A stretch of DNA of 64,000 nucleotides from Ophelia neglecta (taxonomy: Eukaryota). The stretch covers positions 96,410,001-96,474,000 of the forward strand of contig OZ260661.1 in the NCBI GenBank assembly GCA_965285935.1, written 5' to 3'. Below are positions 46,682-64,000 of the stretch, in pieces (positions within the stretch are counted from its first letter, which is position 1; every line of letters starts with the position of its first letter). The notes under the pieces are model-generated. The model searched no databases and was not told where the DNA came from. It saw only the letters and a list, made by a program, of their open reading frames with translations. The translations under genes and the position numbers were made by a program.

Positions 46682-54006
<7,325 letters not shown>

Positions 54007-55054
54007 TTAATTAAAAAGGAAATACATTTATTTTCTAGATTGCATCAAAAGAAATTGACACTGTTAACTGACTGTTTAGTGAACTCCAATGTAGTAAATT
54101 GTCCAGAAAACCTACAGCACACGCATGCAATTATTATTATAATTATAAGAGTGTGGCTGGGAGCAAGCCAACGGATGCTTGAAGGAGCTTGAGAATTCAG
54201 CCTCCATATTGCAGACTGGCAGGTCATTCCACTCTCTGATGTCTGCTTTGAAACCTGATTTAAATGTATAATGTAGGACCTCACACTTAATAATCCAATT
54301 TTACGCCTTTTATACCAAGTGGTGTGTTCCTACCTGGTTGTTTTTAATTGTCTTCAAGGCCCAGACTAATAGGACAGTGGCCGAACTAGAGAGTTAATCA
54401 ACTGGCATTTAACTAAACTGTTTTCTTCAACTAAGATTATCAACGAATGAAGAGTCATTCAATTAGCGAGTCTATGAGGAGGGCAACTGCTGCCATCATG
54501 CTGAAGCAGCACCCCTCAAACAGCACCCAAACAAGTACCTGTGCTTCACTTGGTATCCTTCAATTAAAGTAAAAAACGTTGATTTGCTTAATAAAGCCTG
54601 TCCATGTTTATACAAATTTTAAGAGCCTTACTTACCTTATGATTTAAATATGTGAACAAAACAATGTTTAAAATAGGAATTGTAGACTGTGAGATGTTGC
54701 GACCCTGCCTAGAGTGACACTAATATATTAACCTTCCAAGTAGGAAAAACAACATACCTGGGTATAATTGGAAGTTCTGCCTTAGGTAAATAAGGCTTAA
54801 GAAAATTGACTGAAGACGAGGAGCAGTGTCTAATCGAATACACTTCAGCTGTTCAGTATCAGGGCGTTCATATACAATGTTGGCAACAAAATTATGGTAG
54901 GCCTAGAGTGTTCTGCAATTCTGGTGGTTTCTCATGAACTGTACTCTTCTCGTCTCCATTATACTAGTGAATACACATGCCTATTTTCTGGCTTCTTTAT
55001 TCATAATCTGACGAAACCCACTGAATAGAAGAAACGGTTAATTCATGAACTCAC

Positions 55055-55465
55055 CTTTCACGGCTGGAGAGCCACGTTAATATAAAATTATGCTAAATAT
55101 TGTGTCTAAATTAACAGCAGGGCCCGGTCAACGTAAACAGCGGAAGCGTTGACTATGCCACGTTTGCTTCCCACAATGCTTTGATTGACGTCACACTCAA
55201 GGAGTTCCCTACCGTCAGGACAATTAGGGATTCCCCGCTGTCACTTTACTGTTGACAATAGAGCGAGGGCGGCTAAATTACACTTGTCTTCCTTACGTAA
55301 TAGATGAATCCCTAACGAAGTAACTGGTAGTCACGCAGTAGTGATCAGGTGATCAACAGATCAAGGACACAAGCCTTTCCAGTAATGTCAGATTGATATG
55401 TCCGTGCCCCTCCTCTCGGTCCCTGGCAAGGTGGCTTAAGTCGACTTGAACTGAATAGTTAGACG
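55055..55465. promoter_or_regulatory. bidirectional promoter shared by SEC23 (-) and SELENOL (+)
   Basis: About 400 bp between the SEC23 exon-1 donor and the SelL ATG. TGCCACGT 55156-55163, TTCCCACAATGC (ZNF143/Staf-like) 55168-55179, TGACGTCA 55186-55193, GGGATTCCCC 55227-55236, TTACGTAA 55293-55300. Confidence 0.7.
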
Positions 55466-58400
55466 ATGTCACGGAAAAGAAAGTAATTATATCAGCATTG
55501 ATCTTCTTGTAATAATCTGCCCTTTTATTTTAAATGTCGCGATATTTTTCAACGTTAAATTGTCTGATAATTGGATCTTTGAGCTGTAAATTTATGTTAT
55601 TGAAATACACAAGATCATCTGAAATGGTCTCTCAGGCCTTTCCCTCTGAGTATGTAGCTGGTTACTTGATTGATGACTTGATTCTCCTGACCACTCATCT
55701 GTCAGCGTTAAAGTCTAGCAACCATAATCTTCCAGAACCGTGATTTAAATCTGCTTATTTGATACAGTCTTCAGCAGTGCCTATTTGTGAGGAGAACTTA
55801 GTGTCATCTCCAAATTTTTAGTTGTCTGAAAACTTGGCACCACCTGGACGAATCATTCGGAAAACCACTCTGGTTCTTTCCTCTTAGGGCTTTTCCAGAA
55901 TTTATCCTCAGAGGGGGGGGGGGAGGGATGCACCAGCTGTTTTTTGTCCTTTGGGTTGGGGGGGGGGGGGGGGGGATTTGCCCTCCATGTCTGGGGGCAG
56001 GTGGTTCTCATGGATGCCACCTGTCCAGAAAAGGCTGGGTCCTGGGATAAAAAATGTACAGGGGTCTGTGACATTATTGTTTTTCAAAAGGTATATTTCT
56101 GCGCCAATCTACAAACAATGAACAAATAGGGTACTACACCCAGATTTAAAAAAAAAAGAGATAATCCTCTAAAGTGGGCCTAATTTGGAATATTACTGCA
56201 TGTATCTTATTAAGCCTGAGAATGTAGCAGTCCTTATATCAAGGCCACTATGATACAGAAAAATAGACCACACATGCCCCCCTGTTCAGGGAAGACTGGC
56301 ATCTGGTTGAATTTAATTAATTGTCTCTATTGGCATGCCTACCACAAGATATAAAAAATTTAACCAAATGAGTCATTGCACTTTGGTGTACACAGTTATC
56401 TAACCTGCCAACCAAATATATACTACAATCCCCACTGCAGACGTTTTTAAATACTTTTCTTGTTTGGTTAGAAATCAGGACCCTGTTGAAGAGCCTTTTG
56501 AAACAAAGAGAATTGCAGAAGAAGATGAGGAAGAAAAGAATGTTGTCTTAGGAATGAGATCTCTGATAGAAAATGCATCGAAGGTATTGTTAGAGGCTAG
56601 GAAACTGATCAAAGGTATGCATGTGTTGCTTTTATTTATATTCAATTCATTGAGCTCATGCATACAATTACTGGTATGAAATTTCAACATATTTTAACTA
56701 GTTGAACTATGCACACCATTACTGGTATGTAATTTCAACTTATATTATTATTTGTACATACTATTACTGTTATGCAATTTAGCATATTATTATTTAAATT
56801 GTTTCAATATCACTGAATATTTTCCAAGTAGTTTCCACTTGTTTTTGACTGTTAATTGTTCTTTATACCATATTGACTGCAGCTTACAATGTGAGGTGAG
56901 ATTCCTGGCTGAAATGTTTGCCCTGATTTGTATATTGGCTTTTTGCAATTAATTTAATCCCTACTGGTTTATAATTTCGTGCCAAAAGATATGTAGGCTG
57001 TATACAGATCTATATACAGGTGAATACAGTATTTTTGATGTTTAATTTTGTGACAGAGTGCTTTTTTGTTATGCCCCAGTCACACAGACAGTAGGGCTGA
57101 AATCGGCACCCAATTGGCCCTAATGATATTTCTTTTCCCTCTGTTTTAATTGGTTGTCATGTTGTCATAAGTGATTTCATTTCTTGCTTTTAGTGTGACC
57201 GGGTATCGGTGGTGAATAATTGTATAATCGGTAAAATCATTTGGGTGCCATGCATTATGGGCGGGTGCTTTTGATATAGCCATATAGTTGAGAGCAGGTT
57301 TTTTTTTAATAGTTTAGGGATTACTGGGGTATTACTAAATATTGATATTACTATACTTATTTTTACTGTCTTTTAGAATACTCGTATGATGAATTTGTGT
57401 CCACAAAAATTGGTTGCTTGGGGAAACTGATTGCTTTATATTCAAAATGGTTTTCTGAGTAAGTATGATTAGTGAAACTTAGTTTTGTAAAATCTAACTT
57501 TATTTCCATCCTTTTATATTTGGTAGTAATACATCACTAGTGCTGATCCATTTTCCATTAACAGCTCAAATGTGATGACTAGGAAAGACATGGAAGACTT
57601 GGTGAAGAAACATTTCCGGTTTGTAAACAGACTATGGATATCATCCTGAATACAACCGATCTTAAATATCAAAGCAAGCTGTAATATTGAATTTAAAATT
57701 GTTGTGAGCTTATGTATCAGTAAATGATATATTATTATTGAAGTCTCAGAGTTCTTTTGAAAAATTCTATACTTTTGGACTGCTTTTTACAGGAGTATGA
57801 ACATTCAAGAACACTTTGAGGAATTACTAGAATTTGAGGTATGCAACTTTGTACTTGAGTTTGAACAAAGATATTCAAACCGGATTGATATCAATGCCTA
57901 TGTAAGAGGCATATGCTGTACTAATGACGTCATCCTCTTCTAGTGTGCAGTGAATGGGGATGGAAGTGGATGACATTTTTAGCTCTGCAAATTTTATTTA
58001 ATCCATTAGGCTCATATTTGTATTTAGTATATACATCTAGTATTATTATTTACATTCTCTCCCCATATAGACTGATTACACTTCCTTTTTGATGGAGGTT
58101 GATAAGGGGCTAAGTGGAATTTTGTCCTCCGAACCTCTTGTAGTAGGAAATGAAGGACCTCTGGATTACGCTTTGCACAGTGTGAGTGAAAACAAGACTG
58201 TCACTCTCAGAGATATGCTTGATGGAAAGACATTAATCCTGGTCTTACTGCGCCACTTTGCCTGACTCCCCTGACGGGACCATATAACAGAACTCCAAGC
58301 TGTCCAGGTGAGAACATAGATGCCCTGCTCTTCAAACATAAAAAAAGGAAAAAATTGGTCTGATAGTAAAAGGACCTATTAAAGGTTGTGAGTTGTAATA

Positions 58401-59936
58401 ATCAGTCTTAATATTTTCAAATCAATACAGAGAAAGATTGAGGCAGCTGAAGGAGAGGTCATAGTTATATCATTTGGTGTGAAAGAAATGGCACTGAAAT
58501 GGTTGGAAGAAACAGAATGTAATTATAAGTTGCTGCTAGATCCTGAGAGAAAGGTTAGTTTCATACAACATCTGTTTAAAAAGAAAGACAATTTTTCTAA
58601 ATAATTTTGCTTATTATCTAGAAACACTAAACAAGAGATGATTAAATGCTACCAGTAATTGTTTACTAACAATGTGTTTTAAATGGGTAAATAATATATG
58701 TGTATTGGAATGCGAGCTCCGAATATTTACATCTACATGCATGAGTCTGTTCATGACAAGCATTTAATTAATAGGTTGATTTCATTACCATAATATGGAC
58801 CCTGTTTCCAGAACGACAGAAACACAACCCAGTCATATTAGGCATGTAGGCTGAAAACCAGTTCATGTATTATAATTATATAACTGACAATTGTAATGCA
58901 TTGGGTATGTTTTCTATCCATTACAGGTGTATTGTGCACTTGGCTTAAAAAGATCTGCCGCCAAGGTATGTGGGCCCAACACACTCATTAAAAGTGTTTG
59001 GTCAGATACCGGATATTTCCTTTGAACTAAATTCTAGAATAATTAAATCCTTTAAGTTCTTTCAGTTGTTCTGACAATTGTACAAATATTTGTTAAAGAC
59101 ATGGAGTGTGGAGAGTATAACTTATTATGGAGAACAGATAAGGGCGTCACGTCAGCTACCAAAAGTTTATGCCGGTGTTGAGGACGATCCTCATCAGGTA
59201 CATTGTTCATTTATAAATTAAAGTTTACTGTGTGTTATTTTGCCAATTTTGGAGAGAAATGAAAAATTGGAAAATTACCAGAATATGTATAAACTCTACC
59301 AACTGCAATCCTTGGATAAGGAAAAAATTTAACTGGTGCAATAGATGACCGGTGTTTAAGATACTTTGTTTCAAACAAAATGTATCTCAAGATAACACTT
59401 GGTCAGCATCATCAATAAAAAAGAGAACAGTGAAAGAGTTACATAGATATTGATACATTATTCCAAGCTTTCACATAGGTGGCAATTAGCAATACTGCTG
59501 GAATTAGAAGTACTTTGATTTGTTCAATAAGACAAATTTAGCTTCATTAATAAAACTGTACAATGTGATGTACATATTTCTCTTTTATGATACAGATGGG
59601 TGGAGATTTTATCATCAATTCATCAGGAAAGCTGGTATTTTCATACTGCAGTAAAATCCCCCAGGACAGACCAACCATCGATACCCTGCTGGATGTTTTA
59701 AAGGTGTTGTAATTAAGGAAATAAATTTGCAATTGAAATGGTAAAAAAAAACTTAAGTGCGGTGACAATGTTTCATATTATCAGCTCTGAAAATAAACAT
59801 GGAGGGAGTGACCATGATGCACACATAGTCTAAAGGAATAGGTATTATTGCTTGTCTACCATACAGTGAGTGTTTGTAATTTTGCACTATATTTGATGAT
59901 TTTTTCATGATTTATTTTTAGATGCCAAATGCCTGA
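55466..59936 (+). CDS. SELENOL: selenoprotein L (thioredoxin/AhpC-like fold, UxxU motif), ~320 aa, 11 exons
   Basis: Exons 55466-55482, 56472-56614, 57377-57458, 57565-57618, 57793-57838, 58071-58307, 58431-58553, 58927-58965, 59099-59197, 59596-59703, 59922-59936 with consistent phases. LVLLRHFA-U-LP-U-RDH with TGA at 58263 and 58272; downstream VISFG, LLLDPER, DDPHQMGGDF, DRP. First and last exons are less certain. Confidence 0.92.
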
Positions 59937-59959
59937 CCAACTGACAATATCATGTGTGC

Positions 59960-60052
59960 CTGGTAATATGGATAGCTCTACTTAATGAAAACCTTGAATA
60001 AAACCAATTGGAATTCATGGTTAGATGGCTTTGTGGATAATCCATTTGCTGG
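59960..60052 (+). promoter_or_regulatory. eukaryotic SECIS element in the SELENOL 3' UTR
   Basis: ATGA 59985-59988 and AGAT 60023-60026 form the core; helix II AACC-T-TGAAT / ATTCA-T-GGTT; unpaired AAAA 60000-60003 plus apical CCAATTGG mini-stem; helix I TCTAC/GTGGA and ATGGAT/ATCCAT. Confidence 0.92.
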
Positions 60053-60478
60053 ACTTATGCATGGTATAGAAGTTGTACAGACGGAATCTTGCTCATCTTG
60101 AAGGATTTCCAGGACTTGATGCAACTTATTTAATGATGGACTAGACAGATAATATTTTGATGAAAGTCTGATTCTTTGGATATTTCATTTAAAGAAGAGG
60201 ACATCAGTTTGTGGCTTATGTGATAGAAGCCTATGCTCAAATATATGTTGAAATTACATGCGTGGTATGTCATAAAATATGTAACTATAACTTGTAATAA
60301 TGGAATAATAAAATTCAGGTTAGATCGCATTAATTTTATAATTATTGAAAGTTTAATGCCGATGGCAGAATATATTAGAATGAGTGGACTAAGTTGGCTT
60401 TAACATATTTTTGTTAGGATTGGCCCAATAGCATGTGGCTTATCTAGTGGACTCTCCCAGAATAAGGTCATTTAGATC

Positions 60479-62073
60479 TTATTCTTTTACATTGGGTTTT
60501 TCATCTTCTGGTATTGTGGGAAGCTGATTGGATTATACTCAGTAAAAATGTTTTAATGACCCTTTGATTGTTGTCTAATTTCGTGCCAAAAGATATGTAG
60601 GCCTATGTATACAAATACGAATTGAACATAAACGAGTTTAATTTCTAGACAGAGTAATGCTTCACCAAATTTATGTGTAAAAACCTGCGCAAACATTTTT
60701 ATTGTTAAATTATAGGTATAAGTTACGTCCCCTTTTGCCGCTTGACCTGCCTGGGCTATAACATTTAGGATCATACAAAATATTTTGAATATTAAGTCTT
60801 CATCAAGAATCCCCAAGACAACTATGAATTTGACCCTTGTCCTGTTTAATACTGTGAAGTCAAATTGAGGAAATAAAGGACTTCAACACAACATGCTTGT
60901 TGAACAGTGCTACATACACATGAAAATGTTTTGTTCTCTAAAAAGTCAAATGTTTTGTGTTATACATTTATAGATCTATAGGACATTCAATTTGACCTTT
61001 ACCTATTTTTCTAGTTCAAACCTGCAATATTTGTTCATTCATCCAATCAGTTATGCATTAATCAGGGTTGCCAAGTTCTAGACGCAGCTTTGTGGGGGAT
61101 TGGCATTTTTTGAGATCCCATGTGGTCAAACATAGAAGGCTAGCCTTTAGTGGCCATGGCCAAGAAGTAATGCAACGTCCATTTAAACGGAAAACAATTG
61201 CGTTTCCAGGAAACATACCACAGGAATTACAGTTTCACCACCCTATCTAATTTTGTACCCAAAATGAGGCAAAAGATTTAATTCATACTGCTTAAAAATG
61301 TAGGATACCAGCAGCCAGATGACATCTGAAGTAAAGGCATTTTCAAAGCCCCTTTTGCGAGTTTTAATTCATTGTTGAAAGTGCACAAGGTTTTATTTCC
61401 TAATATAAGGTGATTATTTTATCCTAATATAAGGTGGTTTTTAAACAAAAGGAAGTAAATATATCAACAAAAAACTTTGTTTATTCAAGGGAAATAAGTG
61501 TGCAAAATATTCATAATTGTTGGTGGTTATATATGCTCAGCCATCAATTAATAAATTGATAAGATCCGGCCAAGGAGCTAGTAAAGTAATTCCTTGGGGA
61601 GGTGAATAATTTTAAGTGTGAACAATTATGAAATGCCATTGGGGACCAACTGTCAGTATATTATGACACTGGATTCTGGATTAAAAAAGCTCAAAATCTT
61701 GAAAAAATGTCTTTAGTCATTTATTGTATTAAACATATGCTACATTGGGGTTTAGGGTTAGCATCTTTTGTCCTAATGTTAAAGTTAATTATGACTACGG
61801 GGCCTCGGGGGGGGGGGGGGGGCTTCTCGAAATTTTAATAAATAGTCACCAAAGGGGGGTAGACTATGAAGACCATTTTAGGAGACATGCTCAGCACGGA
61901 AAATATATGATTTAAAGTAATAAAGTAGATACATATCACTGAATAAAATGAAGAAACACAGACTACCCGAGACCGACACGCACTTTTTGTTGACCCACCA
62001 GGGTATGGTTGATCGGATTTGATCCCCTGTGTTCACTTAAGTTAAAAGGGCAGAGGGAGTTAGTGTTCTGCAT
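60479..62073 (-). CDS. putative unannotated 65-aa micro-protein, 4 exons, divergent from GTF2A1
   Basis: Exons 61967-62073, 61309-61325, 60727-60755, 60479-60523 join in frame (198 nt): MQNTNSLCPFNLSEHRGSNPINHTLVGQQKVRVGLGCHLAAAQAGQAAKGDLPTIPEDEKPNVKE. Middle intron starts GTATCCT. No homology recognised; some splice sites are weak. Confidence 0.5.
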
Positions 62074-62089
62074 GTGTTGACAAGTATCA

Positions 62090-62230
62090 AAATCCACGTG
62101 CTCGTGTTGATGCCTTAGCTCTCGTATATAGTCACGTGCAACGGGAGAGGCTGTGCCTGACGTGACGTCAGTGTAGCCATTGGTATGACCCCCCGCTGCA
62201 GTGAGAAGCAGCTGGCAGACTATAAAAGCG
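62090..62230. promoter_or_regulatory. GTF2A1 core promoter, likely bidirectional
   Basis: TATAAAAG 62221-62228, ATTGG 62179-62183, TGACGTGACGTCA 62158-62170, E-boxes CACGTG at 62095 and 62133, TATATA 62125-62130; CpG-rich. Confidence 0.7.
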
Positions 62231-62322
62231 AGCGAGGAGCACAGATCGCCGGCTTTCCCGAGCCCGCCACGACACGCAAATACGGGAGTTAATCGCCTCT
62301 TAAGAGGCACCATAACATAGAG

Positions 62323-63910
62323 ATGGCAGGCCAAAATCAAGTGGTGAGTCTGCCTGCCGTAAATGAAAATTATAAGTGTTCAAAATATTAGCAGGTTCTT
62401 GTTAATTTGGTCCATACAATGCTTCATGTACAGCCTATTGCGACTGATGGAAGTGACAAGCATAAAGCTAATGTACTGGTTGTGTTGTATTTGGTGCTCC
62501 CGTTTACCAGCGTTGCGCACGAAGACCACCACTGACTGACTATACATGGATTTGGTTTTAATAGGGTAAACCCGGCCTAGGTCTGGGCCTAGTAAGATAT
62601 AGTTACTTTAACAGTTTAAGAGGTTGGGGCTTGGGGGCATTGACACTTTAAAATCGATTTAGTTTTGTAAGGCTATGCGAAGAAAGACCGTATCTAAATA
62701 TAATAGGAGATGAAAATGACAATGTGTAGCTTTAAATTTAAGCTGATGGATTGAATTTCATCATCGTCTCACCAAATAGTGAACACCTCAATTGTAAATT
62801 ATTTGCTCATTTTAATTGTATGGCATCCTTTGTATTTTGCATCTGTTTTTAACTATGGGCTAGTAACATGCTTGTAACACAAGCTGAAACACATTGTAAT
62901 AATTAATGTGGTCTAGGTACTAGCAAAGGCCATGCTTCAGGGCACAGCTTGTTTTCCTCCATGCAACTACTGAATTATGTCCGTCAAAATATGCCAGGGC
63001 ACCCATTATTTAGATTGGCGGGAATTTACTGGTTTTTCCAAAAATCTGCCTGGCCAAAAAATATGGTGTTTCAAGATAAGAAAAGCAGAACGATTTTAGT
63101 ATCAAGTGAACCATATAACACTGTATTGCAAAAGCACTGCTTTTAAGTCCAGAACGAGAGGTTGCACTAACTAAAACCTAAACCTGTTACAACTTTCTAA
63201 AGCTCTGTGAAAGTAAGAACTAGATTAGTGCTGAAGCTTCTTTGTGTTTCCACCTCACTGCGGAGGTGGATCTAACATGTGACAGGGCGCCCATTAACAG
63301 AGTGCAACAATTATACTGTATATAAAAGCTGCCAAACAGTTTATACTTGCTTTGAATGATACATAAATGATTACATAGCAAATGATAAGTAGCCCTTAAC
63401 ACACCAAGCGCATTTTAACCATTAACATGAATGAGTCCCCCCCCCCCCTCAGAGGATTCCTTCATATAAAAGCAAATGTAAAATTATCCTTTTGTGAGGC
63501 CATCCTGATATTAAGCAATACAAATTAATAATTTCCCTGTTTCTCAGGCATCTTTTAGGCATTTTACAAATTAAACAGCATTGGGATTTATTTTCAAAAC
63601 CTGTCTCAGAACAATGGTCCAGTCTATTCTTTACTGTATATTTCTCCAGCACACTTATTTGTTACCCCAACAAAGTCCGGTTGTGATACATTAAAGTTAT
63701 CTATATGCTGCCGGCTCTTACAGTAGGCAGCAGGAGGGCATGCTCTTCTAAATGCCTTGAAAAAATGTCCCATTTATTGCTAATCAGAATTTTAATCATT
63801 ATTTACAGCCAAAAATATACAATGGTGTTGTAGAAGATGTCATAAATAATGTGAGAGAATCATTCCTGGATGAAGGTGTGGATGAACAAGTATTACAGGA
63901 ACTTAAACAG
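62323..63910 (+). CDS. GTF2A1: TFIIA large subunit (alpha/beta precursor), first two coding exons; gene continues beyond the window
   Basis: Exons 62323-62343 (MAGQNQV) and 63809-63910 (PKIYNGVVEDVINNVRESFLDEGVDEQVLQELKQ) match the conserved TFIIA alpha N-terminus. Confidence 0.93.
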
Positions 63911-64000
63911 GTAAGACTGAAAACTACTATATCCAATTTGTTGCTCTTCAGCATGCTCTGCATTGCATTGCATTGTGCTCTGCATTGCAACTTTCTGAAT

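What the first reader, a model, noticed from the sequence alone, without database searches (positions are those of the whole stretch)
58240..58290. Hidden two-selenocysteine gene: UxxU selenoprotein L invisible to the ORF track
Seen: CGC CAC TTT GCC TGA CTC CCC TGA CGG GAC CAT in mid-exon; five further in-phase exons continue a thioredoxin-like fold, and a canonical SECIS follows. Known: SelL has a UxxU motif forming a diselenide bond and is restricted to aquatic organisms. Inference: U179 and U182 are both recoded by one SECIS; standard pipelines would truncate or split this gene.
Basis: partly seen in the sequence, partly recalled or inferred. Interest (0 to 1): 0.8.

Follow-up and report, generated by a model that had tools for sequence, protein, structure and literature searches.

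The report
Two-selenocysteine selenoprotein L gene
This is a real, intact selenoprotein L gene in an animal genome: two "stop" codons three positions apart are read as selenocysteine with the help of one RNA hairpin after the gene. The family has been known since 2007, so the gene is correctly spotted but ordinary.

Summary
Exon 58071-58307 (+) is open in one frame except for two in-frame TGA codons, at 58263-65 and 58272-74, giving the motif RHFA-U-L-P-U-RDH. Five further phase-0 exons with GT/AG borders follow and end at TGA 59934-36. The only Rfam match at gathering level in the 64 kb window is a SECIS element at 59977-60037 (+), 41 nt after that stop.

Five independent relatives carry the same motif: two metatranscriptome cDNAs and two genomic contigs, one of which shares the SEC23 head-to-head synteny and the intron positions checked. 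Both TGAs are invariant, while the codons around and between them differ synonymously. The window's exons tile a relative's uninterrupted cDNA reading frame without gaps. Over the 134 codons after the second TGA, differences at codon positions 1/2/3 are 44/20/84.

The downstream part is an AhpC-TSA_2 (Prx-like) domain. The upstream part of a relative is nearest to ESM Atlas clusters named "selenoprotein L". The genome also has a tRNA-Sec and a SepSecS gene.

Verdict: a genuine SelL (SELENOL) orthologue, already a known kind. I obtained no RNA or protein evidence from this organism. The scan also noted another UxxU selenoprotein elsewhere in this genome.

The parts
55466..55482 (+). Tentative first coding exon (ATG plus 14 nt, donor GT at 55483). 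It gives the reading frame that makes Sec residues 179 and 182.
   Evidence: Sequence only: ATG, phase-compatible donor AA|GTAATT, and position in the GC-richer intergenic stretch between SEC23 (minus strand) and this gene. Inference; no homology support.
56472..56614 (+). Coding exon B (N-terminal region, weakly conserved)
   Evidence: Open frame with AG/GT borders. Weak resemblance to the equivalent part of relatives (one search shows it for L009; one search did not align the window's exon well).
57377..57458 (+). Coding exon C
   Evidence: tblastn with the relative's N-terminal piece, E 7e-5. Tiles P0003 columns 65-90.
57565..57618 (+). Coding exon D
   Evidence: tblastn HSP 57569-57622. 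Tiles P0003 columns 92-108. Borders AG/GT.
57793..57838 (+). Coding exon E (ends ...EELLEFE)
   Evidence: Borders. 60% identity to P0003 at the matching place.
58071..58307 (+). Coding exon F, carrying the redox motif RHFA-U-L-P-U-RDH
   Evidence: 51% identity over 63 residues to the cDNA relative, E 1e-15. Representative search hits P0002/3/7/8.
58263..58265 (+). First in-frame TGA, read as selenocysteine (U179 in the model)
   Evidence: In phase 0. TGA is invariant in five lineages while the neighbouring codons change synonymously.
58272..58274 (+). Second in-frame TGA, read as selenocysteine (U182)
   Evidence: Same as for the first TGA.
58431..58553 (+). Coding exon G (start of the AhpC-TSA_2 domain)
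   Evidence: Pfam AhpC-TSA E 0.003 and AhpC-TSA_2 E 0.028 on the 41-residue exon alone. tblastn E 1e-14.
58927..58965 (+). Coding exon H (13 codons)
   Evidence: Tiles the cDNA relative at columns 53-65. L009 has the same intron positions.
59099..59197 (+). Coding exon I
   Evidence: tblastn E 9e-16. 17 of 33 codons differ only synonymously from L007.
59596..59703 (+). Coding exon J (MGGDFII... strand-turn-strand and C-terminal helix)
   Evidence: tblastn E 5e-12. 67% identity to L007.
59922..59936 (+). Last coding segment (4 codons) and the true stop, TGA 59934-59936. The 3' UTR continues from here.
   Evidence: Acceptor AG and frame. Relatives end within a few residues of this point.
59977..60037 (+). 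SECIS element: AUGA core at 59985-88, unpaired AAAA, apical mini-stem CCAAUUGG (type II form), GA on the 3' side
   Evidence: Rfam SECIS_1 at 36.2 bits against a gathering score of 35. Relatives have a SECIS at the equivalent 3' UTR position: L013 41.3 bits, L012 28.2, L009 28.0, L007 20.9. The basal helix shows compensatory changes.

Best explanation
The window carries an intact, multi-exon selenoprotein L (SelL/SELENOL) gene on the + strand, about 11 coding exons from 55.5/56.5 kb to 60.0 kb and about 320 codons.

Shown:
- Two in-frame UGA codons separated by Leu-Pro (RHFA-U-L-P-U-RDH) sit just upstream of an AhpC-TSA_2 / peroxiredoxin-like (thioredoxin-superfamily) domain.
- The reading frame downstream of them is under purifying selection.
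- A single type-II SECIS hairpin lies in the 3' UTR.
- The genome has a tRNA-Sec(TCA) and a SepSecS gene.

Inferred from established knowledge of eukaryotic Sec decoding and of SelL (Shchedrina et al. 2007, cited as ref. 59 in PMC3316567):
- The SECIS recruits SBP2 and eEFSec with Sec-tRNA, which recodes both UGAs. They lie about 469 and 460 nt upstream of the SECIS in the spliced mRNA.
- The third UGA, at 59934, is only about 50 nt from the SECIS core and acts as the stop.
- The two selenocysteines occupy the CxxC position of the fold and cycle between a diselenide and two selenols as a redox centre.

The physiological substrate is unknown for the whole family.
For: - Sequence and frame.
- SECIS: the only gathering-level Rfam hit in the window.
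- Representative search with the 64-residue piece before the first TGA: four relatives (P0002, P0003, P0007, P0008) all end exactly at ...LLRHFA.
- Their contigs continue TGA-Leu-Pro-TGA-Arg-[Asp/Ser]-His. Both TGAs are invariant, with synonymous variation at Arg, Phe, Ala, Leu and Pro codons around and between them.
- Uninterrupted cDNA contigs L007/L008 and L012 keep the TGA segment and read on for 134-137 codons.
- The window's exons tile that frame without gaps at 55-67% identity.
- After the second TGA, codon-position differences are 44/20/84, and 49 of 134 codons differ only synonymously.
- PF13911 scores 58.6 bits on the relative's downstream piece.
- L009 shows the same downstream intron positions (exons F-J read) and the same SEC23 head-to-head synteny.
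- SECIS elements occur in the relatives' 3' UTRs, with compensatory pairs in the basal helix.
- The Atlas clusters nearest to P0003 are named 'selenoprotein L', scores 0.97.
- tRNA-Sec scores 77.9 bits with anticodon TCA; a multi-exon SepSecS gene is present.
Against:
- The SECIS score is only just over the gathering threshold (36.2 against 35), and its fold is not unusually stable on its own (z = -1.28).
- The first exon and start codon are a guess.
- The link to the name SelL rests on defining features and on language-model similarity of a relative, not on a residue alignment to a named SelL.
- The partial AlphaFold model was of low confidence (pLDDT 53.6), so the fold claim rests on Pfam.
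Confidence: 0.93

Rival explanations
1. The two TGAs are genuine stops. The gene makes a ~178-residue protein ending in RHFA, and the downstream exons are untranslated or a decaying remnant.
For: Automatic gene callers give exactly this product for relatives. There is no expression evidence for this organism.
Against: The 134 codons after the second TGA align without gaps to a distant relative, with a 44/20/84 codon-position bias and no stops. They form a PF13911 domain. A SECIS follows in five lineages. The Leu and Pro codons between the TGAs vary only synonymously.
Confidence: 0.03
2. The TGA-containing stretch is removed from the mature mRNA by an alternative splice, so an ordinary Cys-free or shortened protein is made.
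For: None found. It is only that splicing in this species could not be checked. Public annotations often 'skip' Sec exons, but that is an annotation artefact (10.1101/2024.10.30.620813).
Against: Intron-free cDNA contigs of two relatives retain the whole segment, including both TGAs. Removing it would delete the redox motif and the strand before it. The exon has ordinary AG/GT borders at 58070/58308.
Confidence: 0.02
3. It is a selenoprotein of a different Prx-like family (SelU/PRXL2A-type or another AhpC-TSA_2 protein), not SelL proper.
For: PF13911 is shared by several Prx-like families. The genome has other PF13911 loci, one with an in-frame TGA.
Against: SelU-type proteins have a single Sec, whereas this gene has UxxU. 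The Atlas clusters nearest to the relative's N-terminal part are 'selenoprotein L' from chordates at 0.97. UxxU plus one 3' UTR SECIS is the published definition of SelL (PMC3316567, PMC3473315, PMC13134290).
Confidence: 0.02

Closest known systems
Selenoprotein L (SelL / SELENOL) of fishes and marine invertebrates (Shchedrina et al. 2007, PNAS 104:13919, cited in PMC3316567; invertebrate members in PMC3473315)
   Same: Two Sec residues two positions apart (UxxU) next to a peroxiredoxin-like thioredoxin-fold domain. One SECIS in the 3' UTR serves both UGAs. Found in an animal genome with full Sec machinery. Routinely mis-annotated by standard pipelines.
   Different: Nothing of substance was found. 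What could be specific to this locus is the gene's head-to-head position with SEC23, also seen in L009, and a ~175-residue N-terminal part without a Pfam family. I could not check whether either is general for SelL.
Bacterial SelL (marine bacteria)
   Same: UxxU motif in a Prx-like protein, with a single SECIS for both Sec residues (my knowledge of the 2007 paper; PMC2398784 reports UxxU Prx-like 2 sequences in ocean metagenomes).
   Different: The bacterial SECIS lies inside the coding region just after the UGAs. Here the SECIS is a eukaryotic kink-turn type in the 3' UTR, and the gene has introns.
SelU / PRXL2A (FAM213A) family, also PF13911
   Same: AhpC-TSA_2 domain. A selenoprotein in many aquatic animals, with the redox motif at the same structural place.
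   Different: SelU has one Sec (CxxU-type), not UxxU, and lacks the N-terminal extension seen here. The genome's other PF13911 loci are separate genes.
Selenoprotein P
   Same: The other animal selenoprotein family with more than one Sec codon (PMC3316567).
   Different: It has many Sec codons, two SECIS elements, and a Sec-rich tail used for transport rather than a UxxU redox centre.

Membership tests
Selenoprotein L (SELENOL) | Two in-frame UGA codons separated by exactly two codons (UxxU) | tested here: met
   TGAs at 58263-65 and 58272-74, both phase 0 in an otherwise open exon. The same arrangement occurs in five relatives.
Selenoprotein L (SELENOL) | Peroxiredoxin-like / thioredoxin-superfamily domain directly following the motif | tested here: met
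   PF13911 AhpC-TSA_2 scores 58.6 bits (cut-off 27) on the relative's piece, starting 10 residues after the second Sec. The window's exon G alone gives AhpC-TSA E 0.003. The window's exons tile that domain.
Selenoprotein L (SELENOL) | UxxU occupies the CxxC redox position of the fold | tested here: inconclusive
   The motif follows a hydrophobic strand (LILVLL) and precedes a predicted helix, as CxxC does. However, the AlphaFold model of the downstream piece was of low confidence (pLDDT 53.6), PDB sequence searches were not significant, and a read-through protein could not be submitted.
Selenoprotein L (SELENOL) | A single eukaryotic SECIS in the 3' UTR | tested here: met
   One SECIS_1 match at 59977-60037 +, 41 nt after the stop, and no other at E <= 10 in 55000-64000. 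Relatives have one at the same place.
Selenoprotein L (SELENOL) | Sequence kinship with proteins named selenoprotein L | tested here: met
   This is indirect. P0003, 51% identical to the window's exon F, has two chordate clusters named 'selenoprotein L' as its nearest ESM Atlas clusters, with score 0.97 and 216-218 of 256 features shared. There was no residue alignment to a named SelL.
Selenoprotein L (SELENOL) | Host has Sec-decoding machinery | tested here: met
   tRNA-Sec at G000:C9:47360617-47360702 scores 77.9 bits and ARAGORN calls it SeC(TCA). A SepSecS gene spans seven exon matches at G000:C1:146.49 Mb.
Selenoprotein L (SELENOL) | Both Sec residues are inserted and can form a diselenide | not testable with these tools
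   Needs 75Se labelling or mass spectrometry. Shown for zebrafish SelL in the 2007 paper (my knowledge; the paper is not held in the library).
SelU / PRXL2A | Single Sec in the redox motif | tested here: not met
   Two Sec codons are present.
Bacterial SelL | SECIS within the coding region immediately downstream of the UGAs | tested here: not met
   The gene is spliced and the SECIS is a eukaryotic SECIS_1 in the 3' UTR, about 469 nt downstream in the mRNA.

The most novel reading that the evidence does not exclude
The ~175-residue N-terminal part of SelL has no Pfam family but is conserved across the relatives found here. It could be an uncharacterised domain that sets the protein's partner or substrate. 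The conserved head-to-head pairing with SEC23, seen in the window and in L009, could reflect a shared bidirectional promoter that links SelL to the early secretory pathway. Neither idea is excluded and neither is supported beyond synteny in two genomes.
Probability: 0.07. Interest if true: 0.45.

Novelty: already known. Interest (0 to 1): 0.2.

Why it matters
The gene is a textbook case of stop-codon recoding, with two UGAs read as selenocysteine through one SECIS. Its practical value is for annotation. Every automatic gene call recovered for relatives was cut at the first UGA or split into two ORFs. A dedicated study reports SELENOL among the worst-annotated selenoproteins in public databases (10.1101/2024.10.30.620813). 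Annotating it correctly matters for selenoproteome counts and for studies of selenium use in aquatic animals. It opens no new biological question.

Tried and rejected
- **Word-index protein search:** the 64-residue pre-UGA piece found no candidates. That search is limited to candidate proteins of 35-112 residues.
- **PF13911 search of the own genome:** it listed six other loci but not this one, because the domain is cut into short exons here. This is not evidence against the gene.
- **PDB sequence and profile searches:** nothing significant. The best match was a weak, collinear hit to an archaeal peroxiredoxin-like protein at E 0.14.
- **AlphaFold on the downstream piece with a shallow alignment:** pLDDT was 53.6. 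The order of secondary-structure elements fits a Trx/Prx fold, but the model is too poor for a fold search, so none was run.
- **Consensus folding of five SECIS elements:** MAFFT/RNAalifold recovered the basal helix with compensatory changes but misaligned the upper helix.
- **Original SelL paper:** PMC1955791 is not held in the library.
- **P0007:** it has no contig on record.
- I did not build or search the spliced or read-through protein of the window. All window searches were done exon by exon, by reference.

Full report
**Observation**

The quoted sequence is present at 58251-58283 on the + strand. Read from 58071, the base after an acceptor AG, the exon gives 79 codons. Its only interruptions are TGA at 58263-65 and TGA at 58272-74, and the motif reads ...LILVLLRHFA-U-L-P-U-RDHITELQAVQ. 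The other two frames are full of stops. A script confirmed that these are the only two in-phase TGAs in the exon, and that this exon and the five that follow have AG/GT borders and lengths divisible by three. Those five exons are 58431-58553, 58927-58965, 59099-59197, 59596-59703 and 59922-59936, ending in TGA 59934-36. No long ORF on the opposite strand competes with this model.

**SECIS**

An Rfam scan of 55000-64000 at E <= 10, and of the whole window at gathering thresholds, gives one real match. It is SECIS_1 at 59977-60037 on the + strand, 36.2 bits against a gathering score of 35, 41 nt after the stop. It has the AUGA core (59985-88), an unpaired A-run, an apical mini-stem (CCAAUUGG, the type II form) and the 3' GA. 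Its thermodynamic stability alone is unremarkable (z = -1.28), which is usual for SECIS elements. By exon lengths, the SECIS starts about 469 nt after the first UGA in the spliced mRNA. No second SECIS was found.

**Relatives**

The word-index protein search found nothing for the 64-residue piece before the first TGA, because it only sees candidates of similar length. The exhaustive representative search with the same piece found four true relatives: P0002 (E 1.5e-11), P0003 (4.6e-9), P0007 (5e-5) and P0008 (9e-4). The four other hits were long repeat-containing proteins matched in several stretches, which I did not take for relatives. All four relatives end at exactly the residue aligned to the window's Ala178...LLRHFA. 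They are therefore gene calls cut off at a stop at the same place.

Their contigs show what follows.

- L007 and L008 are intron-free metatranscriptome contigs. The frame continues TGA-CTA-CCG-TGA and then runs for 137 more codons to a stop. The gene caller had split the message into a 188-residue and a 121-residue "gene".
- L012, another cDNA-like contig, reads ...FLRHFA-U-L-P-U-RDH plus 134 codons.
- L009 and L010/L011 are genomic contigs from two further organisms with the same motif in an exon.

Across the five lineages both TGAs are invariant. The codons around and between them change synonymously: Arg CGC/AGG/AGA/CGA, Phe TTT/TTC, Ala GCC/GCT, Leu CTC/CTA/CTT and Pro CCC/CCG/CCA. That is the signature of translation through both UGAs.

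**The downstream frame is translated**

The window's exon pieces tile the uninterrupted reading frame of L007 end to end, without gap or overlap, at 55-67% identity. tblastn gives collinear HSPs with E-values from 1e-14 to 5e-12 for the larger exons. Over the 134 codons after the second TGA, nucleotide differences fall 44/20/84 on codon positions 1/2/3, and 49 codons differ only synonymously. L009 has the same intron positions for exons F to J, and SEC23 lies head-to-head upstream, as in the window (SEC23 first coding exon at 53479-53994 on the minus strand).

**Family**

The relative's downstream piece is a clear AhpC-TSA_2 domain (PF13911, 58.6 bits, cut-off 27), starting 10 residues after the second Sec. 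The window's 41-residue exon G alone gives AhpC-TSA E 0.003. The ESM Atlas places the downstream piece among AhpC-TSA_2 clusters. It places the upstream part of P0003 nearest to two chordate clusters automatically named "selenoprotein L", with score 0.97 and 216-218 of 256 features shared. Their representatives are 161 residues long, a length that would fit truncation at the first Sec, which I did not check.

The N-terminal ~175 residues have no Pfam family. The start codon is inference only.

**Sec machinery**

The genome has a tRNA-Sec at C9:47360617-47360702 (77.9 bits; ARAGORN calls it SeC with anticodon TCA). It also has a multi-exon SepSecS gene on C1 at 146.49 Mb. The scan's notes mention other candidate selenoproteins in this genome; I did not test them.

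**Mechanism**

Shown:

- the UxxU codons, and purifying selection on the frame downstream of them;
- the Prx-like domain;
- one 3' UTR SECIS, conserved in position in the relatives, with compensatory changes in its basal helix;
- the presence of tRNA-Sec and SepSecS.

Inferred from established knowledge:

- SBP2 binds the SECIS kink-turn, and eEFSec delivers Sec-tRNA to both UGAs.
- The terminal UGA lies about 50 nt from the SECIS core, at or below the minimal spacing reported for recoding (Martin, Harney and Berry 1996, listed as ref. 60 in PMC3316567), and so terminates translation.
- The two selenols form a reversible diselenide at the CxxC position of the fold, as shown for zebrafish SelL (Shchedrina et al. 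2007, ref. 59 in PMC3316567).

**Comparison with what is known**

SelL is described as a two-Sec protein served by a single SECIS. Among vertebrates it is confined to non-tetrapods, chiefly fishes (PMC3316567, PMC13134290). It is present in sponge, placozoan, cnidarian, annelid, amphioxus and Ciona (PMC3473315, PMC2874816). Every defining feature that could be tested was met. The exact equivalence of UxxU to CxxC could not be shown structurally, because the AlphaFold model was poor (pLDDT 53.6) and PDB sequence searches were not significant.

It also agrees with a study that finds fewer than 1% of SELENOL genes well annotated in Ensembl (10.1101/2024.10.30.620813).

**Limits**

All searches of the window were exon by exon, by reference.
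- The organism was not identified.

**Verdict**

This is a genuine SelL orthologue. It is a known kind of gene, of interest mainly as an annotation correction.

Noticed in passing
window 53479-53994 (-) and L009 902-2876 (-): The first coding exon of a SEC23 homologue lies head-to-head with the SelL gene, with about 1.5-2.5 kb between the coding starts. A genomic contig from another organism has the same arrangement, so the gene pair is conserved and may share a bidirectional promoter.
   Followed up: partly
G000:C8:65202622-65203005 (L001): This is the best PF13911 match in the genome (43 bits). It contains an in-frame TGA and a TAG. It could be a SelU-type selenoprotein exon or two exons read across an intron. 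No SECIS was found at gathering level within the 3.4 kb fetched.
   Followed up: partly
G000:C2:9288314-9596589: More than 40 near-identical 81-nt matches fall just under the tRNA-Sec cut-off (43.6 bits) and are spaced a few kb apart. This looks like a large tandem array of a long-variable-arm tRNA gene (Ser/Leu type), not tRNA-Sec.
   Followed up: no
window 56965-57010 and 60575-60625: The same ~25-nt string (…atttcgtgccaaaagatatgtaggc…) occurs in a SelL intron and again downstream of the gene. It is probably part of a dispersed repeat.
   Followed up: no
window 55915-55985 and about 61800-61830: Long G-runs (poly-G of 10-25 nt) lie in the first intron region and downstream. The second sits inside a weak chance match to an archaeal snoRNA model.
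   Followed up: no
P0007 (156 aa) and ESM Atlas cluster rank 3: A 156-residue 'hypothetical protein' cluster, mostly from Nematoda, is as close to the SelL N-terminal part (0.95) as the named chordate clusters are. P0007 has the same length and is cut at RHFA. This hints at SelL in some nematodes, a phylum usually described as selenoprotein-poor.
   Followed up: no
same genome, other pieces (scan notes s1-733617, s1-733655): Earlier first-stage notes report a SelW/Rdx-like gene with a UxxU motif and a type II SECIS elsewhere in this genome. PMC3473315 mentions a two-Sec SelW in amphioxus.
   Followed up: no
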